Of a stretch of 64,000 bases of DNA, positions 6,001-44,699 are shown piece after piece. Below the pieces are notes generated by a model. It had not been told where the DNA came from and did not search any database. It worked only from the letters and a program-made list of their open reading frames with translations. The translations under genes and the position numbers were made by a program. Source of the DNA: Macrostomum lignano (taxonomy: Eukaryota). Location of the stretch: assembly GCA_002269645.1 (NCBI GenBank), contig NIVC01000613.1, positions 62,001 through 126,000 of the forward strand. Reading direction: 5' to 3'. How positions within the stretch are numbered: position 1 is the stretch's first letter; every line of letters begins with the position of its first letter.

Positions 6001-7735
6001 AGACAAGAGAGAGACAATAGAGAGACAAGAGAGAGGCAAGGGAGAGGCAAGGGAGAGACAAGAGAGAGACAAGGGAGAGAGAGAGACAATAGAGAGACAA
6101 GAGAGAGGCAAGAGAGAGACAAGAGAGAGACAAGGGAGAGACAAGAGAGAGACAAGGGAGAGAAAGAGACAATAGAGAGACAAGAGAGAGGCAAGGGAGA
6201 GACAAGAGAGAGACAATAGAGAGACAAGAGAGAGACAATAGAGAGACAAGAGAGAGACAAGAGAGAGACAAGAGAGAGGCAAGGGAGAGACAAGAGAGAG
6301 GCAAGGGAGAGGCAAGAGAGAGACAAGAGAGAGACAAGAGAGAGACAAGAGAGAGGCAAGGGAGAGACAAGAGAGAGGCAAGGGAGAGACAAGAGAGAGG
6401 CAAGGGAGAGGCAAGAGAGAGACAATAGAGAGACAAGAGAGAGACAAGAGAGAGACAAGAGAGAGGCAAGGAAGAGACAAGAGAGAGACAAGAGAGAGAC
6501 AAGAGAGAGACAATAGAGAGACAAGAGAGAGGCAAGGGAAAGACAAGAGAGAGGCAAGGGAGAGACAAGAGAGGCAAGGGAGAGACAAGAGAGAGGCAAG
6601 GGAGAGACAAGAGAGAGGCAAGGGAGAGACAAGAGAGAGGCAAGGGAGAGACAAGAGAGAGACAAGAGAGAGACAAGAGAGAGACAATAGAGAGACAAGA
6701 GAGAGGCAAGGGAAAGACAAGAGAGAGGCAAGGGAGAGACAAGAGAGGCAAGGGAGAGACAAGAGAGAGGCAAGGGAGAGACAAGAGAGAGGCAAGGGAG
6801 AGACAAGAGAGAGGCAAGGGAGAGACAAGAGAGAGGCAAGGGAGAAACAAGAGAGAGGCAAGGAAGAGACAAGAGAGAGGCAAGGGAGAGACAAGAGAGA
6901 GATGCAAGGGAGAGAGAGACATGAGAGAGGCAAGGGAGAGACAAGAGAGAGACAAGAGAGAGGCAAGGAAGAGACAAGAGAGAGACAAGAGAGAGACAAG
7001 AGAGAGACAATAGAGAGACAAGAGAGAGGCAAGGGAGAGGCAAGGGAGAGACAAGAGAGAGACAAGGGAGAGAGAGAGACAATAGAGAGACAAGAGAGAG
7101 GCAAGAGAGAGACAAGAGAGAGACAAGGGAGAGACAAGAGAGAGACAAGGGAGAGAAAGAGACAATAGAGAGACAAGAGAGAGGCAAGGGAGAGACAAGA
7201 GAGAGACAATAGAGAGACAAGAGAGAGGCAAGAGAGAGACAAGAGAGAGACAAGAGAGAGACAAGAGAGAGGCAAGGGAGAGACAAGAGAGAGGCAAGGG
7301 AGAGGCAAGAGAGAGACAAGAGAGAGACAAGAGAGAGACAAGAGAGAGGCAAGGGAGAGACAAGAGAGAGGCAAGGGAGAGACAAGAGAGAGGCAAGGGA
7401 GAGACAAGAGAGAGGCAAGGGAGAGGCAAGAGAGAGACAATAGAGAGACAAGAGAGAGACAAGAGAGAGACAAGAGAGAGGCAAGGAAGAGACAAGAGAG
7501 AGACAAGAGAGAGACAAGAGAGAGACAATAGAGAGACAAGAGAGAGGCAAGGGAAAGACAAGAGAGAGGCAAGGGAGAGACAAGAGAGGCAAGGGAGAGA
7601 CAAGAGAGAGGCAAGGGAGAGACAAGAGAGAGGCAAGGGAGAGACAAGAGAGAGGCAAGGGAGAGACAAGAGAGAGACAAGAGAGAGGCAAGGGAGAGAC
7701 AAGAGAGAGGCAAGGGAGAGAGAGACAAGACAGAC
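1..7735. repeat. GA-rich satellite, 11-bp units (GAGAGACAAGA / GAGAGGCAAGG) with higher-order structure; fills the protocadherin intron
   Basis: Direct reading. The translated period of 11 aa equals 3 x 11 nt. The marker variant GATGCAAGGGAGAGAGAGACATG recurs at about 373, 1435, 2058, 2519, 3353, 3739, 4688, 5523, 5909 and 6902. Confidence 0.97.
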
Positions 7736-7793
7736 AACGGAGACAGGGGAGAGACAACTGAGAGGCAAGCAGAGTGGAGCAGCAGCCACTGAC

Positions 7794-8439: not shown

Positions 8440-9960
8440 GACGAGAACAGAGAAAAGGAGAGAGAGGTGAAAGGAGAGGAGAGAGGGTAGAGGAGAGGGA
8501 GATGAGAGGGGAGAGGGGAGAAGAGAATGGAGAGAGGAGAGGAGACAGACGAGAGAGGAGAAGAGAGGTGTTGTGTTTTAGTTAATTGAATTGAATTCAG
8601 TCAGTTGGAGACACTTGGGTCTCGCTCAATATATTTATAGTCAAAGCATGCACGATGAACATTACTCAATCGTTAGCTAGCATTGGCACGTTAAACTGAA
8701 CACTGATTGTGCAATAACTTATCAATAGATTTCAAAGCAAACTATTCAATGAATCATCATGCAACTAAATCACGTTGCACTGTCACAACAAGAGGGGAGA
8801 GAGGAGAGAGGAGAGGGAGAGAGGAGAGGGGAGAGAGGAGAGAGGAGAGAGGAGAGGGGAGAGAGGAGAGGGGAGAGAGGAGAGGGGAGAGAGGAGAGGG
8901 GAGAGAGGAGAGGGGAGAAAGGAGAGAGGAGAAGAGAGGGGAGAGAGGAGAGGGGAGAGAGGAGAAGAGAGGGAGAGAGGAGAGGGGAGAGAGGAGAGGG
9001 GAGAGAGAGGAGAGGGGAGAGAGGAGAGTGGAGAGAGGAGAGGGGAGAGAGGAGAGGGGAGAGAGGAGAGGGGAGAGAGGAGAGGGGAGAGAGGAGAGGG
9101 AGAGAGGAGAGGGGAGAGAGGAGAGGGGAGAGAGGAGAGGGGAGAGAGGAGAGGGGAGAGAGGAGAGGGGAGAGAGGAGAGGGGAGAGAGGAGAGGGGAG
9201 AGAGGAGAGGGGAGAGAGGAGAGGGGAGAGAGAGGAGAGGGGAGAGAGGAGAGGGGAGAGAGGAGAGGGGAGAGAGGAGAGGGGAGAGAGAGGAGGGGAG
9301 AGAGGAGAGGGGAGAGAGGAGAGGGGAGAGAGAGGAGAGGGGAGAGAGGAGAGGGGAGAGGCGAGAGGGGAGAGAGGAGAGGGGAGAGAGGAGAGGGGAG
9401 AGAGGAGAGGGGAGAAAGGAGAGAGGAGAAGAGAGGGGAGAGAGGAGAGGGGAGAGAGAGGAGAGGGGAGAGAGGAGAGGGGAGAGAGGAGAGGGGAGAG
9501 AGGAGAGGGGAGAGAGAGGAGAGGGGAGAGAGGAGAGGGGAGAGGCGAGAGGGGAGGGAGGAGAGGGGAGAGAGGAGAGGGGAGAGAGGAGAGGGGAGAG
9601 AGGAGAGGGGAGAGAGAGGAGAGGGGAGAGAGGAGAGGGAGAGAGGAGAGGGGAGAGAGAGGAGAGGGGAGAGAGGAGAGGGGAGAGGCGAGAGGGGAGA
9701 GAGGAGAGGGGAGAGAGGAGAGGGAGAGAGGAGAGGGAGAGAGGAGAGGGGAGAGAGAGGAGAGGGAGAGAGGAGAGGGGAGAGAGGAGAGGGAAAGAGG
9801 AGAGGGGAGAGAGGAGAGGGGAGAGAGGAGAGGGGAGAGAGGAGAGGGGAGAGAGGAGAGGGGAGAGAGGAGAGGGGAGAGAGGAGAGGGGAGAGAGGAG
9901 AGGGGAAAGAGGAGAGGGGAGAGAGGAGAGAGGAGAGAGGAGAGGGGAGAGAGGAGAGGG
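8440..9960. repeat. GA-rich repeat (14-bp GAGGAGAGGGGAGA), interrupted by a solo LTR at 8569-8790
   Basis: Direct reading; the overlapping long ORFs are repeat artefacts. Confidence 0.95.
8569..8790 (-). mobile_element. Solo LTR, 222 bp
   Basis: Ends TGTTGTG...CACAACA (7-bp inverted termini, TG...CA). Flanked by 5-bp direct repeat AGAGG (8564-8568 and 8791-8795). CTATAAATA TATA-like box on the minus strand. Confidence 0.8.
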
Positions 9961-10304
9961 GTGGACGACAAAGGAGATGAAAGGGAAGAAGGAAAAAGCA
10001 AGAGGAAAATAGGGCAGATGCAGATGACTAAAAGAGGGGAAAACAGGAAGGCAAGGTCAAGAATGCATACGTGTAAAAATAGGGAATAAAAGGCCCTGCT
10101 GCGATGTTTTTTACGAATCATTTTTTATCCTTCAAGCTATCATTTGCCGCTGTCACATGAGCTCAAAGCGGTGATGGTGATTGACATCCAGCCTCTTTTG
10201 TTTGAATTGTAGAATAATATATGCTTCTTAAGTTTTTTATCATATTCGCTTCCCTTAGTGATGATGACATCAAGGGTCATCAGAGGTAAATTCATCCTGG
10301 ATGA

Positions 10305-10995
10305 ATCCATTTTCCAAGATTATGGGAAGCAGAGTGGATTTAAGGGGAATTTTTAACGGTATTAAGGATTTTTGGACGGAAGAATGCGAAGATGAAGAGC
10401 ATTGGAACAAGAAAAAAGCACTTCAACATTCAGTCTGTGATGCCGGGTGTTCCATCTGACCAGCGACTTCAACTAAAGGAGATCAGGATCCAAAACTTGG
10501 AGAGTTTGGAACTTGGAGTTAAACCCAGTTTTGAGGCAATTCTGCCCATTTCGCTGACTCCACGAGGATCACGACGCTTTTACGCCCTCTAGGCTGAACT
10601 GGCTAATATTAATGTCTCCCTGGAAACCACCATTGAGGTGTTGCTACTCCAGGCTCCAGATCTAGATCGCCTTGACTTGCGTACGTCCATGACTAAGTTC
10701 TGCTGGTGTACGAGAGGAGCTGGGTTATAAAATAATAAAAAGGGGAACACTGCACGCCACCTGCTTGCCTTCAATAAACGTGTCCCTTCCTAACTATAGC
10801 CATTGTAAAGGTGTTTTCCTCAAAAAAAAAAGGTTCGAACACAGCAAACGCAATCAAGGAGCAACCACTCTAGAAGGAGAACTGGTGCTGCTGGTCTTAA
10901 AGGTCAGAGGTTGTGATGCGGTGAAATCTACCAGAATTATGTTTAAAGCGTCTTCTGTTAAAAGACGAATAAGTAGAGAATTTCTAAGCAAGTAA
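10305..10995 (+). pseudogene. Possible decayed leucine-rich-repeat (F-box/LRR-like) coding remnant
   Basis: One frame broken by stops gives FPRLWE, IQNLESLELG and QAPDLDRLDLR; the next ORF has LVLKVRGCDAV. These are LxxLxL-like motifs only, with no database confirmation. Confidence 0.3.
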
Positions 10996-18540: not shown

Positions 18541-19080
18541 AGTGTGCATAGCCATCCGATTTGCAAAATGGACTTCTAATTTTTTTAGAGAAAGATTCGT
18601 ACCTATGAGGGCTGACCCTAAACTAACAATAAACAAACCACACTACTTTCAATACAGTACTAAGCATCCGAATTTTTCTATCGAAAACACTAGAAAGTAA
18701 AAGAGGCCATCTAACGAGACAGAAATGGCTCAACTATTAGTAAAAGCAGCCGAAAATCTCCGAAATAAGGAAAGGAATACCTTTGATTTACTCTTGTCTA
18801 TCCAAACCAACAGTCACCTACTTGCCTACATTTCATTTGGCTACAAGATCGGCAAAGCTCACAGACTTCTCTCTCTCTCTCTCTCCAGTTACCTTTGGCT
18901 ATTTTAACACCGTGCGTGGCCTCACGAAAGTCATGCATGCTATTAAAAAAACTGCTGGCTGTGTGTATCGAGTCTTATCTGACATGCCAACCCCTGTCTC
19001 TCCGTGCGCACCCAGCATAAATTCTAGCCCGTCTCGGCATAAGGCACTAAAATTCTCAGACTGGTGAACACCTGGAAACA

Positions 19081-19335: not shown

Positions 19336-20636
19336 GGGGCTCTGGAAATTGGAACTTCAGGAGAGCTGAGATTGGAACTTCAGGGGCTCTGGAAATTGGA
19401 ACTTCAGGAGAGCTGAGATTGGAACTTCAGGGGCTCTGGAAATTGGAACTTCAGGGGCTCTGAAAATTGGAACTTCAGGGGCTCTGGAAATTGGAACTTC
19501 AGGGGCTCTGGAAATTGGAACTTCAGGGCTCTGGAAATTGGAAATTCAGGGGCTCTGGAAATTGGAACTTCAGGGGCTCTGGAAATTGGAAATTCAGGGG
19601 CTCTGGAAATTGGAACTTCAGGGGCTCTGGAAATTGGAACTTCAGGGGCTCTGGAAATTGGAAATTCAGGGGCTCTGGCAATTGGAACTTCAGGGGCTCT
19701 TGAAATTGGAACTTCAGGGGCTCTGGCAATTGGAACTTCAGGGGCTCTTGAAATTGGAACTTCAGGGGCTCTGGAAATTGGAACTTCAGGGGCTCTGGAA
19801 ATTGGAACTTCAAGGGCTCTGGAAATAGAAACTTCAGGGGATCTGGAAATTGGAACTTCAGGGGAGCTGAAATTGGAACTTCAGGGGCTCTGGAAATTGG
19901 AACTTCAGGGGAGCTGAAATTGGAACTTCAGGGGAACTAAAACTAGACCTTCAGGGGAGCTTGTTGTGGCGTGAGTACTAAGTACTAGTATTGAGTACTT
20001 CAGTTGCATCGTATTTATGTTTCAACAATACTGTATTCAACTCAAGCATTGCGTACATGTAACATTTAGCCAATCGGCCAGGTGTTATACACCCAACGTG
20101 CACGGTTCACTAAAGCAGCGAAGTCAGTCGAGACTCTACAATTCTTATTCTCAATTCTCACTCGCATAAAACCCACGCGTTCAATACACAACAGAGCTGA
20201 AACTAGACCTACAGGAAACTGAAACTAGACCTTCAGGAAAACTGAACCTAAACCTTCAGGAAACTGAAACTAGACCTTCAGGAAACTGAAACTAGACCTT
20301 CAGGGAAACTGAAACTAGACCTTCAGGAAAACTGAACCTATACCTTCAGGAAACTGAACCTAAACCTTCAGGAAACTGAAACTAGACCTTCAGGAAACTG
20401 AAACTAGACCTTCAGGAAAATGAAACTAGACCTTCAGGAAACTGAAACTAGACCTTCAGGAAAACTGAACCTAAACCTTCAGGAAACTGAAACTAGACCT
20501 TCAGGAAACTGAAACTAGACCTTCAGGAAACTGAACCTAGACCTTCAGGAAACTGAAACTATACCTTCAAGAAACTGAAACTAGACCTTCAGGAAACTGA
20601 AACTAGACCTTCAGGGAAGCTGAAACTAGACCTTCG
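19336..20636. repeat. Two related intronic minisatellites: 24-bp GGGCTCTGGAAATTGGAACTTCAG and 21-22-bp GAAACTGAAACTAGACCTTCAG
   Basis: Direct reading. Transitional units occur at 19860-19960, and the array is split by a solo LTR. Confidence 0.94.
19962..20193 (+). mobile_element. Solo LTR, 232 bp
   Basis: Ends TGTTGTG...CACAACA. 5-bp target duplication GAGCT (19957-19961 and 20194-20198) taken from the host minisatellite unit. Confidence 0.82.
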
Positions 20637-28672: not shown

Positions 28673-28776
28673 CTCCGAAGCAGCAGGGCCGTCGGGCTCG
28701 CAAGCCGGGCATGGAGCGAAAGCCGAGACAGGCGTACTCTTCCAAGCAGCTGGAGAGGCTGGAGACCGAGTTCAAG
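28673..28776 (+). CDS. Bari: Homeobox gene, exon 2 (homeodomain residues 1-21)
   Basis: Acceptor CTCGCAG|CT; encodes PKQQGRRARKPGMERKPRQAYSSKQLERLETEFK; phase-0 donor AAG|GTAATT. Confidence 0.88.
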
Positions 28777-28807
28777 GTAATTCTCCCTGGCAGTTCCTTG
28801 TGCTTCG

Positions 28808-29620
28808 GTGACTTCCCTGGTGTGTCAGTGACTTCCCTGGTGTGTCAGTGACTTCCCTGGTGTGTCAGTGACTTCCCTGGTGTGTCAGTGACTTCTCTGG
28901 TGTGTCAGTGACTTCCCTGTTGTGTCAGTGACTTTTCTGGTGTGTCAGTGACTTCCCTGGTGTGTCAGTGACTTCCCTGGTGTGTCAGTGACTTCCCTGG
29001 TGTGTCAGTGACTTTCCTGGTGTGTCAGTGACTTTCCTGGTGTGTCAGTGACTTTCCTGGTGTGTCAGTGACTTTCCTGGTGTGTCAGTGACTTTCCTGG
29101 TGTGTCAGTGACTTTCCTGGTGTGTCAGTGACTTTCCTGGTGTGTCAGTGACTTTCCTGGTGTGTCAGTGACTTTCCCTGGTGTGTCAGTGACTTCCCTG
29201 GTGTGTCAGTGACTTTCCTGGTGTGTCAGTGACTTCTCTGGTGTGTCAGTGACTTTTCTGGTGTGTCAGTGACTTTTCTGGTGTGTCAGTGACTTCTCTG
29301 GTGTGTCAGTGACTTCCCTGGTGTGTCAGTGACTTCCCTGGTGTGTCAGTGACTTCTCTGGTGTGTCAGTGACTTCTCTGGTGTGTCAGTGACTTCCCTG
29401 GTGTGTCAGTGACTTCCCTGGTGTGTCAGTGACTTCTCTGGTGTGTCAGTGACTTCCCTGGTGTGTCAGTGACTTTCCTGGTGTGTCAGTGACTTTCCTG
29501 GTGTGTCAGTGACTTTCCTGGTGTGTCAGTGACTTTCCTGGTGTGTCAGTGACTTTCCTGGTGTGTCAGTGACTTCCCTGGTGTGTCAGTGACTTCTCTG
29601 GTGTGTCAGTGACTCCCCCC
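28808..29620. repeat. 20-bp minisatellite (GTGACTTCCCTGGTGTGTCA), about 40 copies, in homeobox intron 2
   Basis: Direct reading. Confidence 0.96.
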
Positions 29621-29629
29621 GGTGTGTGA

Positions 29630-30322
<693 letters not shown>

Positions 30323-35350: not shown

Positions 35351-35946
35351 CTAGGCGACCTTCTTGAACAGCGGCATGATGACCAGGATGATGATGGTGG
35401 ACATGCAGGCGGCCAGCAGGAACAGCCAGAACAGCAGGCGGTCGACAATGAAGGCCAGCATCCGCCAGTCGCTGATGATCATCTGGACGGCTTCGTCCTC
35501 GGCCTGACGGCGGATCAGCATCCGCAGGTGCCGCTGCAGCTGGTCGTACTGGCGCAGCACTGCGGGGTCGCCGCTGGGGCCGACCGGCGACGTCCCGGCG
35601 GTCGTCGAGAATCTCGTCGAAGCAGTTGGCGACTTCTCCGCTGATGCGCCGTTGCAGGCGTCGGTCTCAGCGGTGTCGGCGTCGTCCAAGGCGGTGTCAG
35701 AGTCGCCGGCGCCGTACGCCAGCCGGCTCTGCGTCTCCTCGAAGCGCTGGCGCCGCCGACGCGCCTTGCGCTCGTAGCGCGCCACGGAGGACATGCAGAG
35801 CAGCGGCGCCAGACTGCGGAACAAAATCCGCTTGATGGCTGCCGGCACCGGCCGGTCGTTCGGGCCGATGTGGTGCAGGTGGAGCACGAACACCGTCAGG
35901 ACGATCGACAGCGAGGTGGTGGACATTGTGACAGTCAGGTAGATGC
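35351..35946 (-). CDS. nAChR-family subunit, last exon (M3, cytoplasmic loop, M4)
   Basis: Phase-1 acceptor GCAG|GC; GIYLTVTMSTTSLSIVLTVFVLHLHH...SDWRMLAFIVDRLLFWLF; stop at 35351. Confidence 0.93.
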
Positions 35947-36014
35947 CTGCGGCCCGGAGTTCAGGGTTGGTTTTTGAATTGAAGATTGAGACGAACTCAA
36001 CCGAATTTTTATTT

Positions 36015-36835
36015 AGGTAGATTGGGGCGGATTTAGGTAGATTGTAGCAAATTTAGGTAGATTGGGGCGGATTTAGGTAGATTGTAGCAAATTTAGGTAG
36101 ATTGGGGCGGATTTAGGTAGATTGAGGCGGATTTGAGTAGATTGGGCGGATTTAGGTAGATTGGGGTGGATTTAGGTAGATTGGGCGGATTTAGGTAGAT
36201 TGGGGTGGATTTAGGTAGATTGGGGCGGATTTAGGTAGATTGGCGGATTTAGGTAGATTGGGCGGATTTAGGTAGATTGGGGCGGATTTAGGTAGATTGG
36301 GGCGGATTTAGGTAGATTGGGGCGGATTTAGGTAGATTGTAGCAAATTTAGGTAGATTGGGGTGGATTTAGGTAGATTGTAGCAAATTTAGGTAGATTGG
36401 GGCGGATTTAGGTAGATTGAGGCGGAATTGAGTAGATTGGGGTGGATTTAGGTAGATTGGGGCGGATTTAGGTAGATTGGGGCGGATTTAGGTAGATTGG
36501 GGCAGATTTAGGTAGATTGGAGCAGATTTAGGTAGATTGGGGCGGATTTAGATAGATTGGGCGGATTTAGGTAGATTGGGGCGGATTTAGATAGATTGGG
36601 CGGATTTAGGTAGATTGGGGCGGATTTTAGTAGATTGGAGCAGATTTAGATAGATTGGGCGGATTTAAGTAGATTGGGGCGGATTTTAGTAGATTGGAGC
36701 AGGTTTAGGTAGATTGGGGCGGATTTAGGTAGATTGGGGCGGATTTATGTAGATTGGGGAGGATTTAGGTAGATTGGAGCAGATTTTAGGTAGATTGGGG
36801 CGGATTTGAGTAGATTGGGGCGGATTTGAGTAGAT
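36015..36835. repeat. 20-bp intronic minisatellite (TTTAGGTAGATTGGGGCGGA)
   Basis: Direct reading. Confidence 0.96.
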
Positions 36836-36955
36836 TTGACTGTAATGATTAGATACGAACTCCAATTTTAGATTGGTATTGAAACAATGGCTCCACGATG
36901 CTCTCCAAGACAGGAATAAAAAGCTTCAATAAACAGCGATGAGCTGAGCTCTCAC

Positions 36956-37214
36956 CAATGAGCGGAACGAATTCGCTAGTGGCTGGCATGTTCTCAGCAA
37001 TGAGCAGCATGAACACTGAGAAGGCCAGCAGCACCGTGATGCCCAGGGTGATCTTCTCGCCCGAATCCGGCGGCAGCCAGAATCCCAGCAGGCTGAGAAC
37101 GGTGAGCCACAGGCAGGGAAAGATTATGTTGAACAGGTAGTAAAGGGTTCGGCGTCTGATCACGATGTGGAACTTGATATCCGGGTAGGGTACCGGACTG
37201 ATTGGGTAGATGGT
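36956..37214 (-). CDS. nAChR-family subunit exon (loop C, M1, M2)
   Basis: Acceptor CGCAG|ACC; TIYPISPVPYPDIKFHIVIRRRTLYYLFNIIFPC...PPDSGEKITLGITVLLAFSVFMLLIAENMPATSEFVPLI; phase-1 donor G|GTGAG. Confidence 0.95.
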
Positions 37215-37254
37215 CTGCGGGTTGAGCATGGCGCACATTATTGCGAGGGTGGTA

Positions 37255-37690
37255 CACTTGGGAGAGAGATGAAATGCCAAGATAGGGTTGAGGGCTCAGA
37301 GTGTACATTCGGGGAGAGAGATGAAATGCCAAGATAGGGTTGAGGGCTCAGAGTGTACATCCGGGGGAGAGAGATGAAATGCCAAGATAGGGTTGAGGGC
37401 TCAGAGTGTACATTCGGGGAGAGAGATGAAATGCCAAGATAGGGTTGAGGGCTCAGAGTGTACATTCGGGGAGAGAGATGAAATGCCAAGATAGGGTTGA
37501 GGGCTCAGAGTGTACATTCGGGGAGAGAGATGAAATGCCAAGATAGGGTTGAGGGCTCAGAGTGTACATTCGGGGGAGAGAGATGAAATACCAAAAAAAG
37601 GTGGAGGGCTCAGAGTGTACGTTCGGGAGAGAGATGAAATGCCAAGATAGGGTGGAGGCTCAGAGTGTACGTTCGGGAGAGACACTTGCC
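37255..37690. repeat. 52-bp intronic minisatellite, about 8 copies
   Basis: Unit GGGGAGAGAGATGAAATGCCAAGATAGGGTTGAGGGCTCAGAGTGTACATTC. Confidence 0.94.
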
Positions 37691-37824
37691 CGTGCAAACG
37701 CATTGTTACTCGTATTATTGATATTAGAAACTTAAAAATCAAAAGTTGATCGTTTCAAAAAGTTGATCAACCTATAGAAATTGGAGACTAACACAATTAT
37801 TTTATCATTAATTAATAGTCTCAC

Positions 37825-37903
37825 CTCCTGTCGCTCCACATCGATTCTAATCAGATTCCACTCTCCACTTTGAACATAATTTTGAAAGTCAACCTCATCC
37901 CGC
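37825..37903 (-). CDS. nAChR-family subunit exon (loop F)
   Basis: TTTCAG|G; RDEVDFQNYVQSGEWNLIRIDVERQE; phase-0 donor GAG|GTGAGA. Confidence 0.9.
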
Positions 37904-37991
37904 CTGAAATTTTAGTTTTCGCGATTTACCCTGAGTAGCATGAATTGAGTTTTTCGTCTTTCCAATTGAAAAAGGCTAAAAATCTTCTCAC

Positions 37992-38189
37992 TTCTTGGTG
38001 ATGTTAACTTGAAATCCGTCGTAGGTCCACGAGCCGAATTTCATCGTGCACACCTGGTCGTCGAATGGGAAATATGTGATGTCGATTTTGCAGGTCGATC
38101 TGAGCTTGGCCGGCGGCGGCCAGAACACGGTGCCGTTGGCATCGACCATCGCCTTGCTCTGCATGTAGCCCGTGGTGAAGTCATCGGCG
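37992..38189 (-). CDS. nAChR-family subunit exon (Cys-loop, loop B)
   Basis: [58 protein letters not shown] contains the C-x13-C signature; phase 2 at both ends. Confidence 0.95.
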
Positions 38190-38350
38190 CTAAAAAAAGT
38201 AAAAAAAAAATTGTAATTAAAATTCAGTAAATTGTCAAATCAGAAAATTTTTAAGCGATTTAAATCTTTTTTCGGCACTTTTACAAAAAACGGCAACAAA
38301 ATGCTCAGCTTGCCTACTAATGGTCAGTAGTAGAACTCGGACAGGCTCAC

Positions 38351-38460
38351 CTATTATAAAGTACAATATCGGGCAGCCAAATCTTCTGACAGGGAATGCG
38401 CAAGATTTCCAATCCGTTGTACTCCTTGGGATCCCAGTGGAGTCGCTCGTCGTGCCATTC
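38351..38460 (-). CDS. nAChR-family subunit exon (loop A)
   Basis: 110-nt exon EWHDERLHWDPKEYNGLEILRIPCQKIWLPDIVLYNS; TAG|GAA acceptor, AG|GTGAGC donor. Confidence 0.94.
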
Positions 38461-38689
38461 CTAGAAATCGGAGGGAATCGGGGCTTCTCGCGATCGCTGC
38501 TAAACTATTTAGCATAATTGTCCTAGAAATGCTATCCAGGCATTTCAGCTAGGATCTCGTAATTTAAACAGAATTTCATTTGCAAAAACTTGAGTCTGTT
38601 GAAATACAAACTCTGTTCTACAATGCAAGGATCACTAGTAGTCCTTGATGGGGCAGGCTTGATATTGGTTTGACAACTTTGGCAACCGG

Positions 38690-39490
38690 AATCTTCACCA
38701 GCCCGAATCTTCACCAACCCGAATCTTCACCAACCCGAATCTTCACTAATCTGAATTTCACCAACCCGAATCTTCATCAACCCGAATATTCACCAACCCG
38801 AATCTTCACCAACCCGAATCTTCAATAACCTGAATCTTCACTAACCCGAATCTTCACCAACCCGAATCTTCACCAACCCGAATCTTCACCAACCCAAATC
38901 TTCACTAACTTGAATCTTTACCAACCCGAATCTTCACTAACCTGAATCTTCACTAACCTGAATCTTCACCAACCCGAATCTTCACCAACCCAAATATTCA
39001 CCAACTCGAATCTTCACCAACCCGAATCTTCACCAACCCGAATCTTCACTAACTTGAATCTTTACCAACCCTAATCTTCACTAACCTGAATCTTCACCAA
39101 CCCGAATCTTCACCAACCCAAATATTCGCCAACTCGAATCTTCACCAACCCGAATCTACACCAACCCGAATCTTCACCAACCCGAATCTTCACCAACCCG
39201 AATCTTCACCAACCCGAATCTTCACCAACTCGAATCTTCACCAACCCGAATCTTCACCAACCCGAATCTTCACCAACCCGAATCTTCACCAACCCGAATC
39301 TGCACCAACCCGAATCTTCACCAACCCGAATCTTCACCAACCCGAATCTTCACCAACCCAAATCTTCACTAACTTGAATCTTTACCAACCCTAATCTTCA
39401 CTAACCTGAATCTTCACCAACCCGAATCTTCACCAACCCAAATATTCACCAACTCGAATCTTCACCAACCCGAATCTGCACCAGCCCGAA
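38690..39490. repeat. 16-bp intronic minisatellite (ACCAACCCGAATCTTC)
   Basis: Direct reading. Confidence 0.96.
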
Positions 39491-39825
39491 TAAGCAAACT
39501 TTTACTATCTCATCCTTAAAGTCTTCTAACATCCTCTCGCGCAAACCCGGCCATCGGATGCCGATAAAAAATCCCCAAAAAGTTTTACACTGCCAATCCC
39601 AAGTAGGTGGGAACGCAGGCAGTTGCCTTTGCGAGTCATAAACGAAAGTTATCGTTTATTTCAACACTCGCCACCTGTCAAGATATTGGCAGTTAAGCCA
39701 AGTGCAGCTGCACAGATATTTTTTCAATACAGACAGAGTGTACATTCCTGACCATTAGAAAGTCAAAGTACACCCAGTGTGAGCGGATTTATCCCTGGGA
39801 AATTAACAAGCACAGCTAAACTCAC

Positions 39826-39870
39826 CTGCTCCAGCCAGACATTGGTAGTCAGCACTTGGTTAACCTCATC
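39826..39870 (-). CDS. nAChR-family subunit, first common exon (loop D)
   Basis: 45-nt exon DEVNQVLTTNVWLEQ; TTTTCAG|GAT acceptor, CAG|GTGAGT donor, phase 0. Confidence 0.93.
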
Positions 39871-40249
39871 CTGAAAATTAATCATTTTATTTTCGTAAAG
39901 GATTCTGACAACTGGAAGACTACCAGAAGACAGTAAAAGCCAGGATTCAGTCACGACTATCCCTATGATTTCCCAGAAGACTTGATGCGGATGAAAGATT
40001 TCTTTTAATCTTTTAATCCTGAACTCTTTGATCTATCGGATGCCCCAGAGAATGGTGTCCCCAATTTAGAAGAGCGGCAATGATTAAAAGAATTTCTGCT
40101 AACGAAAACCTTTCCGAGACAAAATTAGCTACTGTATATGTGAATGCGGAGACCGCGAGGAAGACCATGGACTCTTAATTATACTTATAAATCTGGATTG
40201 GAAACTTTTTTGATTCATTTAAAAGATTAGAAAACTGAATTTAGCAGAT

Positions 40250-40560
40250 ATGAGACACAGGAGATGCAGAGGGAGATACAGGAGATGCAGAGGGAGATAC
40301 AGGAGATGCAGAGGGAGATACAGGAGATGCAGAGGGAGATACAGGAGATGCAGAGGGAGATACAGGAGATGCAGAGGGAGACACAGGAGATGCAGAGGGA
40401 GATACAGGAGATACAGAGGGAGATGCAGAGGGAGACACATGAGATGCAGAAGGAGATGTAGAGGATGCGGCAGAGGGAGATTCAGAGGATGAGGCAGAGG
40501 GAGAGGCAGATGAAGACAGAGAGGGAGGCACAGGAGAGGCAGAGGGAGACACAGGAAGGA
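40250..40560. repeat. 21-bp intronic repeat (GAGGGAGATACAGGAGATGCA)
   Basis: Direct reading. Confidence 0.92.
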
Positions 40561-41099
40561 CAGCCAGACACAGTCGGTCCCCGCTCCAGGCCCAATATCG
40601 CAGGCCTCCATGGCTGGCATCAAATCGATTCCAGCCACTGTTGAGTCCCTCAGATTTGCTGCACGAACGGACACAGCTAATTCAAGATAATAGATAAGAG
40701 AGGGTGAAGTGAGAGTCCGCACTCAACCCTACTCTCGCTACACTGTCACACTGCTAGGACGCTAAATTAGACACCCGTCTATCTGCCCAGATCTCCACTG
40801 AGTAAGAGATGTAGAGTGGCTTGTGAGAGGAGGCAGAATCCTCGCATTGCAATTTCAGACTCCGCCGCATCCCTACTTCATCTACTCCATCTTCCTTATC
40901 TATTCTAATAGTTTCTTAAGCTTATTTTGCAGATAATCCAGTGGTTGCTGTTGTTGCCCCGGCATGCGGAGCCTTCTGCTCATCCGGTGTGAGGGCCGAG
41001 AGTTCGCGTCTTCAGCTCATTATTGTGAGCGCAGAAAAGACGCAGCCAAGTGGCATAATCCAGGATGACTAGCTGAGAGGCTGAATGAGAAGCTGAGGG

Positions 41100-41675
41100 A
41101 GATGCAGAGGAGGCAGAGGGGAAGAGGGGGGGCAGAAACAGAGGGGCAGGCAGAGGGGCGGAGGGGCAGGCAGAGGTGCGGAGGGGTAGGCAGAGGTGCG
41201 GAGGGGTAGTCAGAGGGGCGGAGGGCCAGGCAGAGGGGCGGAGGGGCAGGAAGAGGGGCGGAGGGGTAGGCAGAGTGGCGGAGGGGCAGGCAGAGGGGCG
41301 GAGGGGCAGGCAGAGGGGCGGAGGGGCAGGCAGAGGAGCGGAGGGGCAGGCAGAGGGGCGGAGGGTAGGCAGAGGGGCGGAGGGGTAGGCAGAGGGGCGG
41401 AGGGGTAGGCAGAGGGGCGGAGGGGTAGGCAGAGGGGCGGAGGGGTAGGCAGAGGGGCGGAGGGGCAGGCAGAGGGGCGGAGGGGCAGACAGAGGGGCGG
41501 AGGGGCAGACAGAGGGGCGGAGGGGCAGGCAGAGGGGCAGAGGGGCAGACAGAGGGGCGGAGGGCAGGCAGAGGGGCGGAGGGGCAGGCAGAGGGGCGGA
41601 GGGGCAGGCAGAGGGGCGGAGGGCAGGCAGAGGGGCGGAGGGCAGGCAGAGGGGCGGAGGGATAGGCAGAGGGGA
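41100..41675. repeat. 20-bp G-rich intronic minisatellite (AGAGGGGCGGAGGGGCAGGC)
   Basis: Direct reading; starts about 8 nt inside the donor at 41682. Confidence 0.95.
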
Positions 41676-41682
41676 CACTGAC

Positions 41683-41840
41683 CATGTCTGTAATGAGGAT
41701 GAGGGCGAACCCGAATCGCACAGTGACCTGGTCGGAAGCGTTAATGACCGGCCTCACGGAGGGGTCATAGCGGATCATGAGGTTCTCCATGAGCTGCTGC
41801 TCGTCAGGTTTTCGTTTGCCCGTGCCGAGGCGCCTGTCGC
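41683..41840 (-). CDS. nAChR isoform A, exon 2 (N-terminal helix and beta1)
   Basis: Phase-1 acceptor CTCTTCAG|GC; DRRLGTGKRKPDEQQLMENLMIRYDPSVRPVINASDQVTVRFGFALILITDM; phase-0 donor ATG|GTCAGT. Confidence 0.88.
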
Positions 41841-42009
41841 CTGAAGAGCGAATAAGCATTTCTTGTTTTTTTTTGTTTGATTGACAGCCGATGTAGTCTG
41901 ACTGTTTTAATTGATTATTACCTTAATTAAAAGCCGAACATTACACTTTTTGCAGCCTATTCAACACTACAGGCATATTTATTAATTATTGATTAGAAGG
42001 TTTCCAGTG

Positions 42010-42610
42010 AATCACTGAATCCTGAGATGCCGTAGCTGAGTACAGTGACTGAATCCTGAGCTGCCTTAGCTGAGTACAGTGACTGAATCCTGAGATGCCT
42101 TAGCTGAGTACAGTGACTGAATCCTGAGATTCCTTAGCTGAGTACAGTGACTGAATCCTGAGCTGCCTTAGCTGAGTACAGTGACTGAATCCTGAGCTGA
42201 CTTAGCTGAGTACAGTGACTGAATCCTGAGCTGCCTTAGCTGAGTACAGTGACTGAATCCTGAGATGCCGTAGCTGAGTACAGTGACTGAATCCTGAGCT
42301 GCCTTAGCTGAGTACAGTGACTGAATCCTGAGATGCCTTAGCTGAGTACAGTGACTGAATCCTGAGATGCCTTAGCTGAGTACAGTGACTGAATCCTGAG
42401 CTGCCTTAGCTGAGTACAGTGACTGAATCCTGAGCTGCCTTAGCTGAGTACAGTGACTGAATCCTGAGCTGCCTTAGCTGAGTACAGTGACTGAATCCTG
42501 AGCTGCCTTAGCTGAGTACAGTGACTGAATCCTGAGATGCCGTAGCTGAGTACAGTGACTGAATCCTGAGCTGCCTTAGCTGAGTACAGTGACTGAATCC
42601 TGAGATGCCT
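42010..42610. repeat. 34-bp minisatellite (GTGACTGAATCCTGAGCTGCCTTAGCTGAGTACA), about 17 copies
   Basis: Direct reading. Confidence 0.96.
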
Positions 42611-42803
42611 TCTACAAAACCAGTTCCGCCCAAGCTACAAGAGAACCAATTAAGAGATTAAGGAAATTCCGCCAGGGTTTCCATACGACTCCTGAAGCCT
42701 TTATTCAATCAGCTTTTTAGTTTGATGCCCGGAAAGCAGAAAATCTGCAACTCGATGTCCAGACTCCATGACGGCAGCGACTTTGCCCAATGGCGATGCT
42801 CAC

Positions 42804-43022
42804 CAACTGGGATATCTGCACCATCGCAATCTGGAACCGGACTTCCAGCGTTGCCGACGCATCAATGGTGGGCCTGGATGCCGGCTCGTAGTCTGTGAGC
42901 AGGTGGGTGAGCAGCCGCTGCTCATCTGTGACCGCAGCCGACGGCTCTGTTGTCGAACTGGCCACCAAAGAAGAGTCAAGAAGACCAGCAAACAGGCAGA
43001 CTATGACGCTCAGATGTGGCAT
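42804..43022 (-). CDS. nAChR isoform B, alternative first exon (signal peptide, N-terminal helix and beta1)
   Basis: MPHLSVIVCLFAGLLDSSLVA (signal-like) ... DEQRLLTHLLTDYEPASRPTIDASATLEVRFQIAMVQISQL; phase-0 donor TTG|GTGAGC. Confidence 0.85.
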
Positions 43023-43078
43023 TCTTTAGCTTAGAGTGAAATTTCCCGACTTTCTTTTACAACCTCTGTTTGTCCGCT

Positions 43079-43114
43079 CTTATATATAGAAGAAGATCTA
43101 TTTGGACACACGTG
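43079..43114 (-). promoter_or_regulatory. Candidate promoter of isoform B: TATA box and E-box
   Basis: TATATATAAG on the minus strand about 60 nt upstream of ATG 43022; CACGTG at 43109-43114 within the palindrome CACACGTGTG. Confidence 0.5.
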
Positions 43115-43469
43115 TGCCAAGCTGGCTACTTATATGAGTAGAAGGCAGTGTCTAGAGGTCATTTTTTACTATAAAATTTAGAAGTTCTTGAAGAGGATTA
43201 ATGGGAAAAATCAATGAATAAAATCTACGAAATCTCAAGTCCACTTGACTCGAAGCTGTAATGTTCATGTCCAAAATCACTTGGCCGATGTCTGTCTGTC
43301 TGTCTTTTCTATTTGAACTGGCTATAGAGTCTTGAAGATGTGAAAGCTGAACTTGAGTCTGTCAATCATAATCTGATGGAATCACCGCTTTAGGAAATCT
43401 CCCTGCCTGATCTTCTGCAGAGCCATTCGTGACTTACTGGGGAAAATTATGGTAAGGGGGAAATGCTCA

Positions 43470-43880
43470 CCCGAAACTGTGCATCACAAACTGCACATCA
43501 GAAACTGCGCATCACAAGCTGCACATCACAAACTACACATCACAAACTGCACATCACAAACTACACATCACAAACTGCACATCACAAACTGCATATCACA
43601 AGCTGCACATCTCAAACTGCACATCTCAAACTGCACATCTCAAACTGCACATCACAAACTGCACGTCACAAACTGCACATCACAAACTGCAAATCTCAAA
43701 CTGCACATCACAAACTGCACGTCACAAACTGCACATCACAAACTGCACATCACAAACTGCACATCACAAGCTGCAGATCTCAAACTGCACACCACAAACT
43801 GCGCATCACAAACTGCACATCACAAACGGCACATCACAAACTGCACATCACAAGCTGCACATCACAAACTGCACATCACC
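43470..43880. repeat. 14-bp minisatellite (CATCACAAACTGCA)
   Basis: Direct reading. Confidence 0.94.
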
Positions 43881-44032
43881 TAAATTGGAATATCTAAATT
43901 AAAATTTTACATTGCATTGTTATGTTTCGATTATATAATTTACAAAGCTATTATAGAGTCTTTCTAGGAAAATACGCCGAATTTAACGGGTATTAAAGCA
44001 AGAATTTGATAAAATACATTTGAATAACTCAC

Positions 44033-44147
44033 TAGAATTTGTAGTATCAGTAGTGGAGCAGAAGATCGCATTGCAGAAAACAATAATAATGGACAAATTA
44101 ATTACTAAAAGTATAGAGAACTTATTCAAGCACCAGTGAGGTACCAT
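44033..44147 (-). CDS. nAChR isoform A, exon 1 (signal peptide)
   Basis: MVPHWCLNKFSILLVINLSIIIVFCNAIFCSTTDTTNS, followed by a perfect phase-1 donor A|GTGAGT that matches the phase-1 acceptor at 41841. Confidence 0.75.
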
Positions 44148-44699
44148 GGTGCTCAGCCTTAGGCCATTGATTGCTCCGAAAAGTCTCAAGTCAAACCTGG
44201 CATTTCGCCTTGACTCTCGAGAGCTTGTAGAGCTATAAAAAGGGATTTTTTGGTCAGCCAATCAACAGACACACTGCCCCGTGCAGATTTGCGAGCTCTC
44301 TACCTTCAGTCAGTCAGTCTTATGAAATGAAACTCCAGATCTTAATCCCCCCGGAAAAACCTTGGGGCTAGAGGGCCAACTGGGCGCACCTGTCAGCAAG
44401 TTCCCCCCCCCCCGCTTCCTTGAAGTATTGAGCTATACGGGAAGTCTTGAATAAGTGCAGCTTATAGTCTTCAAGAGAAGTCTCGAACTCTCTGCTCTGA
44501 GAAAGATCCTGCTTAGTTAAGTTAGGTATTCTTCCTGAGTGTGGATTTTTGTCATGCTCTTCGTCTGAGCAATGTTTGCACACTTCTAAGCATTTCTCTT
44601 CTAGAGAAGACAGGTCATGCTATGCTACCTACATGTACGAGTATGTGTTTCAATGCACATGTGCATGGTTAAGAAAGCAAAAATGCAGATTTAATTTCA

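What the first reader, a model, noticed from the sequence alone, without database searches (positions are those of the whole stretch)
39826..44147. Cys-loop receptor gene with two interchangeable N-terminal modules, one nested in the intron of the other
Seen: exon 44147-44033 (signal peptide, phase-1 GTGAGT) fits exon 41840-41683 (DEQQLMENLMIRYDPSVRPVINASDQVTVRFGFALILITDM). Between them lies a self-contained first exon, 43022-42804, with its own signal peptide, a TATA box about 60 nt upstream, and the homologous but strongly diverged segment DEQRLLTHLLTDYEPASRPTIDASATLEVRFQIAMVQISQL. Both modules end at the same alignment column in phase 0 and can only continue into the single 45-nt exon DEVNQVLTTNVWLEQ, giving 519-aa and 501-aa products. 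Known: this segment holds the alpha1 helix (subunit assembly) and beta1 (complementary face, loop G region). Inference: one locus makes two subunits with different assembly or ligand properties by promoter choice. The mutually exclusive nAChR exons I know from insects (alpha4 exon 3, alpha6 exons 3 and 8) are internal cassettes, not promoter-coupled modules of this kind.
Basis: partly seen in the sequence, partly recalled or inferred. Interest (0 to 1): 0.85.

Follow-up and report, generated by a model that had tools for sequence, protein, structure and literature searches.

The report
Nicotinic receptor gene, two alternative N-termini
A flatworm nicotinic-receptor gene carries two alternative, homologous front ends, one sitting inside the first intron of the other; the same layout occurs in ribbon worms, molluscs and brachiopods, so it is real and ancient but belongs to a known class of gene architecture.

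Summary
On the minus strand, E1a (44147-44033) plus E2a (41840-41683), or the single exon E1b (43022-42804), join in frame to one 45-nt exon (39870-39826). They give open 519-aa and 501-aa Cys-loop subunits. E1b-to-E2a and E1a-to-E3 splicing both hit premature stops.

The decisive evidence is comparative. RefSeq isoform pairs of the orthologous "alpha-10-like" gene in Lineus, Haliotis, Octopus, Patella, Lingula, Biomphalaria and Mytilus differ in exactly this segment. The Lineus, Patella and Lingula genomes show the same nested order and the same intron phases (1, 0, 0). Two RNA-derived contigs from one unidentified species carry the two N-termini and different 5'UTRs on otherwise 99.4% identical sequence.

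Module B is the only module found in Schistosoma, and the N-terminus annotated in Fasciola and Cryptocotyle is also B-type. Modules A and B both occur in Macrostomum lignano (86% and 74% identical to the window). A rotifer has a single module.

So this is a tandem-exon-duplication N-terminal substitution, most likely driven by an internal promoter, and ancient in Lophotrochozoa. The mechanism class is well known and the isoforms are already in public annotation. I found no paper describing it. Expression in this species, promoter use and functional difference remain inferred.

The parts
44033..44147 (-). E1a: first coding exon of the type I (A) isoform. Signal peptide MVPHWCLNKFSILLVINLSIIIVFCNAIFCSTTDTTNS, ends in phase 1 at GTGAGT.
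   Evidence: It is the only candidate signal exon with a phase-1 GTRAG donor in the 22 kb upstream of E2a. There is no homology support. GC3 is 0.42-0.43.
44233..44240 (-). Weak TATA-like TTTTATAG, with an inverted CCAAT (GATTGG, 44258-44263), upstream of E1a. Candidate distal promoter, low confidence.
   Evidence: Read from the sequence. Not tested.
43079..43086 (-). TATATAAG box 57-64 nt upstream of the E1b ATG. Candidate internal promoter for the type II (B) isoform.
   Evidence: No YTNCAG trans-splice acceptor motif (motif taken from PMC8629364) lies in the 230 nt upstream.
42804..43022 (-). E1b: self-contained first coding exon of the type II (B) isoform (signal peptide, alpha1 helix, beta1 strand). 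Ends in phase 0 at GTGAGC. It lies inside the E1a-E2a intron.
   Evidence: It is the orthologue of the trematode N-terminus (shared RPT, FQ and Q-L signatures; 53-65% identity). It is 74% identical to M. lignano module B.
41683..41840 (-). E2a: second coding exon of the type I (A) isoform (basic leader GKRK, alpha1 helix, beta1 strand). Enters in phase 1 and ends in phase 0 at GTCAGT.
   Evidence: It is 86% identical to M. lignano module A. It has the same exon structure and phases as type I exon 2 in Lineus, Patella and Lingula.
39826..39870 (-). E3: common 45-nt exon DEVNQVLTTNVWLEQ (start of beta2, loop D Trp). It is the only in-frame partner of both modules.
   Evidence: It is 100% identical to M. 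lignano and aligns to the alpha7 sequence DEKNQVLTTNIWLQM.
38351..38460 (-). E4, common exon (110 nt, loop A region).
37992..38189 (-). E5, common exon with the Cys-loop C-x13-C ([15 protein letters not shown]) and the loop B Trp.
37825..37903 (-). E6, common exon.
36956..37214 (-). E7, common exon: loop C remnant without vicinal Cys (TIYPISPVPYPD), TM1-TM3, GEK motif.
35351..35946 (-). E8, last exon: end of TM3, cytoplasmic loop, TM4, stop TAG.
42014..42611 (.). Tandem array of 34 nt x 17.6 copies. It fills most of the 963-nt spacer between the E1b donor and the E2a acceptor. On the pre-mRNA each unit contains CAGGAUUCAGUCAC.
39941..39954 (-). Single 14-nt perfect complement (GUGACUGAAUCCUG on the pre-mRNA) of the array unit, 71 nt upstream of the E3 acceptor. 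Candidate pairing that would loop out E2a. A lead only.
   Evidence: It is the only occurrence outside the array in the 64 kb. About 0.02 perfect 14-nt inverted pairs are expected in this 3.4-kb region (my estimate).
43474..43879 (.). Intronic 14-nt x 29 tandem array between E1a and E1b. Similar arrays lie at 41141-41674 (C-rich 20-mer x 27, starting 9 nt after the E2a donor) and at 40252-40556.

Best explanation
The locus is the Macrostomum-type orthologue of a lophotrochozoan alpha7-like nicotinic receptor gene. An ancient tandem duplication of coding exon 2 (N-terminal alpha1 helix plus beta1 strand) produced a second copy immediately upstream. That copy acquired its own start codon, signal peptide and, most likely, its own promoter.

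Transcripts from the distal start use E1a (signal peptide) and splice over E1b, which has no usable acceptor, to E2a and then E3. This gives the 519-aa type I isoform, with a basic N-terminal tail and an NAS glycosylation sequon.

Transcripts from the internal start near 43055 begin with E1b and splice to E3, skipping E2a. This gives the 501-aa type II isoform, which has no sequon and has G>Q and DM>QL changes in beta1.

Reading frame enforces exclusivity: E1b-to-E2a and E1a-to-E3 both give premature stops. In Lineus and Patella the 37-59-nt spacer also makes E1b-to-E2a splicing sterically unlikely.

Shown: exon anatomy, frame logic, homology, conservation of both modules, the nested layout in four phyla, and transcripts of both forms in another species.

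Inferred: that both forms are expressed in this animal, that the internal start is a promoter, and that the swap changes assembly, clustering or complementary-face pharmacology.
For: - Anatomy and frames.
- Only two in-frame combinations exist.
- Both modules carry coding GC periodicity equal to the rest of the gene, and both give full-length Pfam LBD matches.
- RefSeq isoform pairs differ only in signal peptide plus module. Examples are Lineus XP_064619929.1/XP_064619930.1, Haliotis, Octopus, Patella, Lingula, Biomphalaria and Mytilus edulis.
- Genomic order is type I signal exon, then type II first exon, then type I exon 2, then the 45-nt exon, with phases 1/0/0. This holds in Lineus (spacer 37 nt), Patella (59 nt) and Lingula (191 nt).
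- Many ORF read-throughs with type II followed by type I occur in other taxa, including the flatworm-like P0202.
- Logan RNA contigs L004 and L005 are 99.4% identical over 799 nt from the module/E3 junction onward. Upstream they are unrelated, including the 5'UTRs.
- Window versus M. lignano P0121: module A 86%, module B 74%, core exons 92-100%, cytoplasmic loop 47%.
- Module B shares flatworm-specific residues with Schistosoma, Fasciola and Cryptocotyle.
- TATATAAG lies about 60 nt upstream of the E1b ATG, a stop lies 6 nt upstream, and there is no YTNCAG motif.
Against: - There is no transcript, CAGE or RNA-seq evidence for this species. Its proteins are not in the searched collection, and no Macrostomum DNA could be fetched, so dN/dS was not possible.
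- E1a rests on sequence logic alone.
- The 963-nt spacer here removes the steric block, and E2a has a good acceptor. Internal-start transcripts could therefore often splice E1b-to-E2a and be lost to nonsense-mediated decay.
- Weak in-frame AG sites exist inside E1b (for example at 42946), so cassette-like use from E1a is not excluded by sequence.
- Schistosoma shows that one module can be lost.
- The overall similarity of A and B to the type I and type II sets is only weakly discriminating. The orthology assignment rests on a few signature positions plus exon structure.
Confidence: 0.7

Rival explanations
1. Single-promoter cassette model. All transcripts start upstream, at E1a or at an unseen non-coding exon. 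Module B is chosen by alternative splicing into an acceptor in or just before E1b, so the choice is splicing-regulated rather than promoter-coupled.
For: In-frame AG sites inside E1b keep the frame open when joined to E1a (43000, 42946, 42925). An AG lies within 10-25 nt upstream of the type II ATG in all four species, although that is expected by chance.
Against: Those AGs have poor polypyrimidine tracts (50-55% pyrimidine). Type II exons in four phyla all keep their own ATG and hydrophobic signal peptide, which a cassette exon would not need. L004 and L005 share no 5'UTR sequence. A canonical TATA box sits at the right distance. E1a joined to the leader just upstream of the E1b ATG gives an immediate stop (my translation of the sequence read).
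Confidence: 0.1
2. SL trans-splicing model. The B mRNA 5' end is made by trans-splicing the Macrostomum spliced leader onto the primary transcript near E1b. No separate promoter is needed, and isoform choice is cis- versus trans-splicing competition.
For: About 30% of M. lignano genes are SL trans-spliced (PMC8629364). E1b lies in an intron of a longer transcription unit.
Against: No YTNCAG acceptor motif lies in the 230 nt upstream of the E1b ATG. SL trans-splicing is not, to my knowledge, reported in molluscs, nemerteans or brachiopods, which have the same layout. That statement is from memory and was not tested here. The SL ends in ATG, which would be out of frame or create a short upstream ORF at the nearest AG (43029).
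Confidence: 0.08
3. One module is a relic in this species. The gene is functionally single-isoform. Either type I is being lost, as in Schistosoma, or E1b is silent.
For: Schistosoma intercalatum has only the type II exon. A rotifer has only one module. E1a has weak codon bias. Module B has lost the NxS sequon.
Against: Both modules are open with intact splice sites. Both show full coding periodicity. They are 86% and 74% identical to M. lignano where the unconstrained cytoplasmic loop is 47%. Module B is the sole trematode form, so it is clearly functional.
Confidence: 0.1
4. Assembly artefact: two paralogous genes were collapsed or mis-joined, so the two modules do not belong to one gene.
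For: M. lignano has at least three paralogues of this gene. The region is full of tandem arrays.
Against: Chromosome-scale assemblies of Lineus and Patella and the Lingula scaffold show the same order and phases. Only one copy of every downstream exon is in the window. Independent M. lignano models (P0023, P0121) carry both modules in the same order.
Confidence: 0.02

Closest known systems
RefSeq isoform pairs of 'neuronal acetylcholine receptor subunit alpha-10-like' in Lophotrochozoa (e.g. Lineus longissimus XP_064619929.1/XP_064619930.1; Patella vulgata XP_050402296.1/XP_050402297.1; Lingula anatina XP_013393012.1/XP_013393011.1; Haliotis, Octopus, Biomphalaria, Mytilus)
   Same: It is the same orthogroup (56-61% identity over at least 93% of the query for the near-full-length hits). 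The same swapped segment joins the same 45-nt exon. The nested exon order is the same, as are the intron phases 1/0/0. Type I has a basic leader and type II is a single first exon with its own signal peptide.
   Different: The spacer between the type II donor and the type I acceptor is 963 nt here, inflated by a 598-nt tandem array, against 37-191 nt in the others. The Macrostomum protein has lost the loop C Cys-Cys pair. Module B is more diverged (FQ, QL, no NxS sequon).
Tandem-exon-duplication-derived N-terminal substitutions driven by alternative promoters (class defined in PMC8373072; textbook cases UGT1A and clustered protocadherin variable first exons)
   Same: Homologous 5' coding exons sit in tandem, each presumably with its own start, and are spliced to shared downstream exons. 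They are ancient and conserved.
   Different: There are only two alternatives, and one of them is split into two exons that flank the other (nested). The gene family is a pentameric ligand-gated channel.
Insect nAChR mutually exclusive exons (alpha6 exons 3a/3b and 8a-c; alpha4 exon 4/4') - from my own knowledge
   Same: Duplicated homologous exons diversify the extracellular domain of an alpha7-like nAChR. As I recall (not checked here), insect alpha6 exon 3 is the 45-nt exon equivalent to E3.
   Different: Those are internal cassettes sharing both flanking exons and one promoter. Here the exon one step upstream is duplicated and is tied to its own signal peptide and 5' end.
Human CHRFAM7A (dup-alpha7), a partial duplication of CHRNA7 exons 5-10 fused to FAM7A exons; a structure appears in PDB as 9qto
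   Same: It is an alpha7-type subunit with a replaced N-terminus. As I recall, it co-assembles with the canonical subunit and modulates it.
   Different: It is a separate, recent, human-specific gene. The new N-terminus is non-homologous and removes part of the ligand-binding domain.
C. elegans unc-49 GABA receptor locus - from my own knowledge
   Same: One Cys-loop receptor locus encodes several subunits by combining shared and alternative modules.
   Different: unc-49 shares the N-terminal part and swaps the C-terminal binding and channel modules. This is the mirror image of the present case.

Membership tests
Cys-loop (pentameric) ligand-gated ion channel | Neur_chan_LBD plus Neur_chan_memb domains | tested here: met
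   PF02931 at 3.6e-67 (profile 1-216/216) for both isoforms. PF02932 at 7.4e-45 (1-232/233).
Cys-loop (pentameric) ligand-gated ion channel | Cys-x13-Cys signature loop | tested here: met
   [15 protein letters not shown] in E5.
Nicotinic acetylcholine receptor, alpha7-like clade | Closest solved relatives are nAChR alpha7; GEK cation-selectivity motif before M2 | tested here: met
   human alpha7 chains are the best hits (E about 4e-89). DSGEKITLGITVLL is present.
nAChR alpha-type subunit | Vicinal Cys-Cys in loop C | tested here: not met
   The window and M. lignano have TIYPISPVPYPD. Trematode, nemertean, mollusc, brachiopod, annelid and rotifer orthologues keep Y-x-C-C. By convention this is a non-alpha subunit despite the 'alpha-10-like' naming of its orthologues.
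Lophotrochozoan dual-N-module alpha7-like orthogroup | Nested order: type I signal exon, type II first exon, type I exon 2, 45-nt exon | tested here: met
   Window; Lineus, Patella, Lingula.
Lophotrochozoan dual-N-module alpha7-like orthogroup | Intron phases: 1 after the type I signal exon, 0 after both modules | tested here: met
Lophotrochozoan dual-N-module alpha7-like orthogroup | Module signatures. Type I: xPDEQ, basic leader, G[LFM] at positions 34-35. Type II: xTDEQ, ASRP, I at position 35, S at position 41. | tested here: met
   column table. B matches the type II consensus at T2, D14, P17, A18, S19, I35 and S41. A matches type I at P2, R14 and F35 and has a GKRK leader. Whole-module identity discriminates only weakly (0.54 versus 0.52 for A; 0.42 versus 0.49 for B).
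Tandem-exon-duplication N-terminal substitution by alternative promoter | Alternative exons are homologous and adjacent | tested here: met
   40% identity, E = 2e-6, 963 nt apart.
Tandem-exon-duplication N-terminal substitution by alternative promoter | The alternatives are never combined in a productive mRNA | tested here: met
   In silico, E1b plus E2a gives a stop after 22 codons, and E1a plus E3 gives an immediate stop.
Tandem-exon-duplication N-terminal substitution by alternative promoter | Each alternative has its own transcription start | tested here: inconclusive
   A TATA box lies about 60 nt upstream of the E1b ATG and no acceptor motif is present. Transcripts in another species have distinct 5'UTRs. 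There are no TSS data for this species.
Classical mutually exclusive cassette exons (insect alpha6 exon 3 type) | Both alternatives are internal exons sharing the same upstream exon | tested here: not met
   E1b starts with its own ATG and signal peptide and has a stop 6 nt upstream. Only weak internal AGs are available. Type II isoforms in the RefSeq orthologues start at their own Met.

The most novel reading that the evidence does not exclude
A promoter-coupled swap of the apical alpha1-beta1 module of an alpha7-like nicotinic subunit has been kept, in the same nested genomic layout, since before flatworms, nemerteans, molluscs and brachiopods diverged, and has never been described or tested. 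On this reading the two forms (a basic-tailed, glycosylated type I and a short type II) would define two receptor populations. They would differ in assembly partners, extracellular clustering or complementary-face pharmacology. In Macrostomum, where a repeat insertion abolished the steric block, a 14-nt intronic pairing (array 42014-42611 with 39941-39954) would loop out E2a to keep E1b-to-E3 splicing efficient.
Probability: 0.35. Interest if true: 0.7.

Novelty: new member of a known kind. Interest (0 to 1): 0.5.

Why it matters
The finding shows that a whole branch of animals (Lophotrochozoa) diversifies one conserved alpha7-like receptor at its apical N-terminal helix and first beta strand. 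This region is implicated in subunit biogenesis and assembly and in the complementary face of the ligand site.

It does so by a two-start gene design rather than by extra genes or internal cassette exons.

The finding also gives a ready-made natural experiment: two isoforms that are identical except for about 45 mature residues.

It explains recurrent gene-model errors in which both modules are concatenated (M. lignano P0023 and P0121, Nucella P0028).

It flags a difference within flatworms: Macrostomum keeps both modules, whereas only type II was found in Schistosoma. This matters when cholinergic receptors are compared as anthelmintic targets.

Tried and rejected
- **Exact look-up of window proteins.** Isoform A, isoform B and two ORF-style products are not in the collection, so there is no annotation or transcript for this species.
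- **Word-index searches with the two N-terminal fragments.** These returned only 21 and 11 candidates. They missed even P0023, so absence there means nothing. They did yield the informative pair P0122/P0124.
- **Locus look-ups that failed.** Lingula X2, Dimorphilus, Adineta and Owenia are not on record, and the Haliotis gene is too long. Annelids therefore remain untested at the genomic level.
- **dN/dS for the modules.** Not possible because no Macrostomum DNA was reachable. I used segment-wise protein identity against the cytoplasmic loop instead.
- **Whole-module identity for assigning A and B to types I and II.** Only weakly discriminating. I relied on signature columns and exon structure.
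- **More distant paralogues with X1/X2 isoforms.** Liolophura, a second Lineus gene, Paramacrobiotus and Procambarus do not show the module swap. Mya and Mercenaria X2 skip the 45-nt exon instead.
- **Rfam scan of the window.** No hits.
- **Literature.** Nine searches found no description. The main lophotrochozoan nAChR survey (PMC6896357) contains neither 'isoform' nor 'alternative'.
- **Rejected readings.** Misassembly; pseudo-exon status for E1b; the in-frame ATG at 41859 as a start for module A, because it gives no signal peptide.

Full report
**1. What is in the window.** The region 35351-44147 holds one gene on the minus strand. I re-derived every exon from the sequence.
- E1a 44147-44033: 115 nt, ATG in the context gcaccATGg, hydrophobic leader, donor GTGAGT, phase 1.
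- E1b 43022-42804: 219 nt, own ATG with an in-frame TAA 6 nt upstream, leader MPHLSVIVCLFAGLLDSSLVA, donor GTGAGC, phase 0.
- E2a 41840-41683: 158 nt, acceptor ctcttcag, donor GTCAGT, phase 1 in and phase 0 out.
- E3 39870-39826: 45 nt.
- Common exons: E4 38460-38351, E5 38189-37992 (Cys-loop), E6 37903-37825, E7 37214-36956 (TM1-3) and E8 35946-35351 (stop TAG).

E1a+E2a+common gives 519 aa. E1b+common gives 501 aa. Both give full-length Pfam Neur_chan_LBD matches with the same score, plus Neur_chan_memb. The closest solved structure is human alpha7. In that alignment the swapped segment corresponds to mature alpha7 residues 2-42, which are the N-terminal helix and beta1. E3 corresponds to DEKNQVLTTNIWLQM.

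**2. Is it more than chance?** The two modules are 40% identical (tblastn E = 2e-6), and nothing else in the 64 kb resembles any exon of the gene. Both modules show the same coding periodicity as the rest of the gene: GC at codon positions 1/2/3 is about 0.6/0.4/0.77. Flanking introns are flat at 0.3-0.45.

Only two exon combinations are productive. E1b-to-E2a gives a stop after 22 codons, and E1a-to-E3 stops at once.

E1a has no homology support, because signal exons do not conserve. It is, however, the only ATG-started hydrophobic ORF with a phase-1 GTRAG donor in the 22 kb upstream of E2a.

TATATAAG sits at 43086-43079, about 60 nt upstream of the E1b ATG.

**3. Relatives.** The best database hits are Macrostomum lignano models at 67-73% overall identity. 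Against P0121 the core exons are 92-100% identical and the cytoplasmic loop 47%. The window is therefore from Macrostomum or a close relative. Its own proteins are not in the collection.

Two M. lignano models (P0023, P0121) contain both modules concatenated in the window's order, B then A. This is a prediction artefact, but it proves that both exons exist there. Module A is 86% identical to the window and module B 74%.

Trematode orthologues (Schistosoma, Fasciola, Cryptocotyle) start with a B-type module that shares the flatworm-specific residues RPT, FQ and the Q-L ending. In the S. intercalatum locus I found only that exon and the 45-nt exon. No type I exon 2 appeared in the 29-kb intron or in the 10 kb upstream.

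**4. The key result.** RefSeq isoforms X1/X2 of the orthologous "alpha-10-like" gene differ only in signal peptide plus this module, and both join the same DEVNQVLTxNVWLEQ. This holds in Lineus (Nemertea), Haliotis, Patella, Octopus, Biomphalaria and Mytilus (Mollusca) and Lingula (Brachiopoda).
- Type I has a longer leader ending in a basic stretch (often R-x-R-R) before xPDEQ.
- Type II is short and usually reads xTDEQRL...ASRP...GITLTQISDM.

I fetched three loci and mapped the exons.

| Locus | Type I signal exon | Type II first exon | Type I exon 2 | 45-nt exon |
|---|---|---|---|---|
| Lineus L001 | 10001-10079 | 19668-19865 | 19903-20069 | 35791-35835 |
| Patella L002 | 3001-3067 | 35866-36066 | 36126-36275 | 75143-75187 |
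| Lingula L003 | 3001-3079 | 10137-10406 | 10598-10770 | 18643-18687 |

In all three, as in the window, the type II first exon lies inside intron 1 of the type I form, immediately upstream of type I exon 2. The phases are 1, 0, 0 in all of them. The spacer between the type II donor and the type I acceptor is 37, 59 and 191 nt, against 963 nt in the window.

The exhaustive HMMER search with E1b found many ORF read-throughs with type II followed by type I in further taxa. One is P0202, whose common part is closest to trematodes (69%) and to the window (67%).

A rotifer locus has a single module in the canonical two-exon form. The duplication therefore probably arose after Gnathifera split off, or was lost there.

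Window A matches type I in exon structure, basic leader and signature columns. Window B matches type II at seven signature columns.

**5. Transcript evidence elsewhere.** Two Logan contigs, L004 (SRR15851233) and L005 (SRR22292628), have their upstream introns removed, so they are RNA-derived. L004 carries a type I N-terminus and L005 a type II N-terminus. They are 99.4% identical over 799 nt from the module/E3 junction onward. They share nothing upstream, including 185 and 90 nt of 5'UTR. Both isoforms are therefore made, with different 5' ends, in at least one species (unidentified, mollusc-like).

**6. Mechanism.** The best reading is a tandem-exon-duplication N-terminal substitution driven by two starts.
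- Distal-start transcripts splice E1a to E2a across E1b, which has no usable acceptor.
- Internal-start transcripts begin at E1b and splice to E3.

Frame incompatibility removes mixed products. In Lineus and Patella the 37-59-nt spacer is probably too short to be spliced out, as is known for other mutually exclusive exon pairs.

In the window a 34-nt x 17.6 tandem array (42014-42611) has expanded the spacer. Something else must therefore favour E1b-to-E3, or nonsense-mediated decay clears E1b-to-E2a products.

One lead is that each array unit contains CAGGAUUCAGUCAC. Its only other occurrence in the 64 kb is a perfect reverse complement at 39941-39954, 71 nt upstream of the E3 acceptor. Pairing there would loop out E2a. 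My estimate is about 0.02 perfect 14-nt inverted pairs expected in this 3.4 kb. It was found post hoc, so I treat it as a hypothesis only.

SL trans-splicing is common in M. lignano: about 30% of genes, acceptor motif YTNCAG, and an SL that ends in ATG (PMC8629364). No such motif precedes E1b.

**7. Likely consequences (inferred).** The isoforms differ in about 45 mature residues at the top of the extracellular domain and in beta1.
- A keeps the NAS sequon and has a basic N-terminal tail (GKRK).
- B has DAS, so no sequon, plus G>Q and DM>QL in beta1.

The Macrostomum subunit lacks the loop C Cys-Cys pair that all other orthologues examined retain. It would therefore contribute mainly a complementary or structural face, and beta1 changes could matter there. 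Assembly, extracellular clustering and pharmacology are all plausible targets. None was tested.

**8. Novelty.** The class is well known. Homologous N-terminal substitutions from duplicated 5' coding exons with alternative promoters include 39 human cases and the UGT1A and protocadherin arrays (PMC8373072). The isoforms themselves are already in RefSeq for many lophotrochozoans.

I found no paper that describes the feature in nicotinic or other Cys-loop receptors. The main lophotrochozoan nAChR survey does not mention isoforms at all (PMC6896357; searches). From my own knowledge, the insect alpha6 exon 3 alternatives affect the neighbouring 45-nt exon and are internal cassettes.

I therefore rate this as a new member of a known kind. 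Interest is moderate because the nested layout is conserved across four phyla and offers a clean natural experiment.

Noticed in passing
window 28700-30322, + strand: A homeobox gene on the opposite strand, downstream of the receptor gene. The homeodomain is split by an intron: RKPRQAYSSKQLERLETEFK ends near 28770, and [20 protein letters not shown] lies in the ORF 29645-30322. A poly-Pro and poly-Gln tail follows. Pfam Homeodomain 4.6e-15.
   Followed up: partly
window 1-7774 and 8791-9961: Very large purine-only satellites: the 11-mer GAGAGACAAGA x 712 copies (7.8 kb) and AGAGAGG-type 7/14-mers (1.2 kb). AT skew is 0.96 and GC skew 0.65. Tandem arrays also fill most introns of the receptor gene.
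   Followed up: partly
window 39941-39954 versus 42014-42611: A 14-nt perfect reverse complement of the intronic 34-nt array unit lies 71 nt upstream of the E3 acceptor. It is the only copy outside the array in the 64 kb. It could form a loop that excludes E2a.
   Followed up: partly
window 37214-37170 (E7 start, loop C): The Macrostomum orthologues (window, P0121, P0001) have lost the vicinal Cys-Cys of loop C (TIYPISPVPYPD). Trematodes, nemerteans, molluscs, brachiopods, annelids and rotifers keep it. The subunit has become non-alpha in this lineage.
   Followed up: yes
window 41840-41800 (E2a leader) and type I leaders of orthologues (P0131, P0010, P0015, P0020, P0012, P0157): Type I isoforms in several phyla carry a polybasic, often R-x-R-R, stretch just before the alpha1 helix (RHRR, RSRR, RLRR, RGRR, KKRR). 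The window has DRR...GKRK. Type II lacks it. It may be a convertase site or a matrix-binding tail.
   Followed up: no
window 42860-42852 (module B, DAS) versus 41766-41758 (module A, NAS): The conserved N-glycosylation sequon N-A-S in the alpha1-beta1 loop is kept in module A. It is lost in module B of the window (DAS), M. lignano (HAG), Fasciola (VAS) and Cryptocotyle (IAS). Schistosoma B keeps NAS.
   Followed up: partly
window 41141-41674: A 534-nt C-rich 20-mer array (CCCCTCTGCCTGCCCCTCCG-like on the transcript) starts 9 nt after the E2a donor. It could bind poly-C or pyrimidine-tract proteins and influence E2a use.
   Followed up: no
P0048 (Mya arenaria X2) and P0153 (Mercenaria X2): In two bivalves a RefSeq isoform skips the 45-nt exon (E3 equivalent) in frame, joining the module directly to EW[IV]DERL. 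This is a second kind of variation at the same spot.
   Followed up: no
P0023, P0121 (M. lignano), P0028 (Nucella), P0198, P0202: Public gene models that concatenate the type II and type I modules into one protein. These are almost certainly prediction errors caused by this architecture.
   Followed up: yes
window 41859-41841: An in-frame ATG sits in the polypyrimidine tract just upstream of the E2a acceptor (MLIRSSGDRRLG...). It would give a product without a signal peptide, so I judged it not to be a real start.
   Followed up: yes
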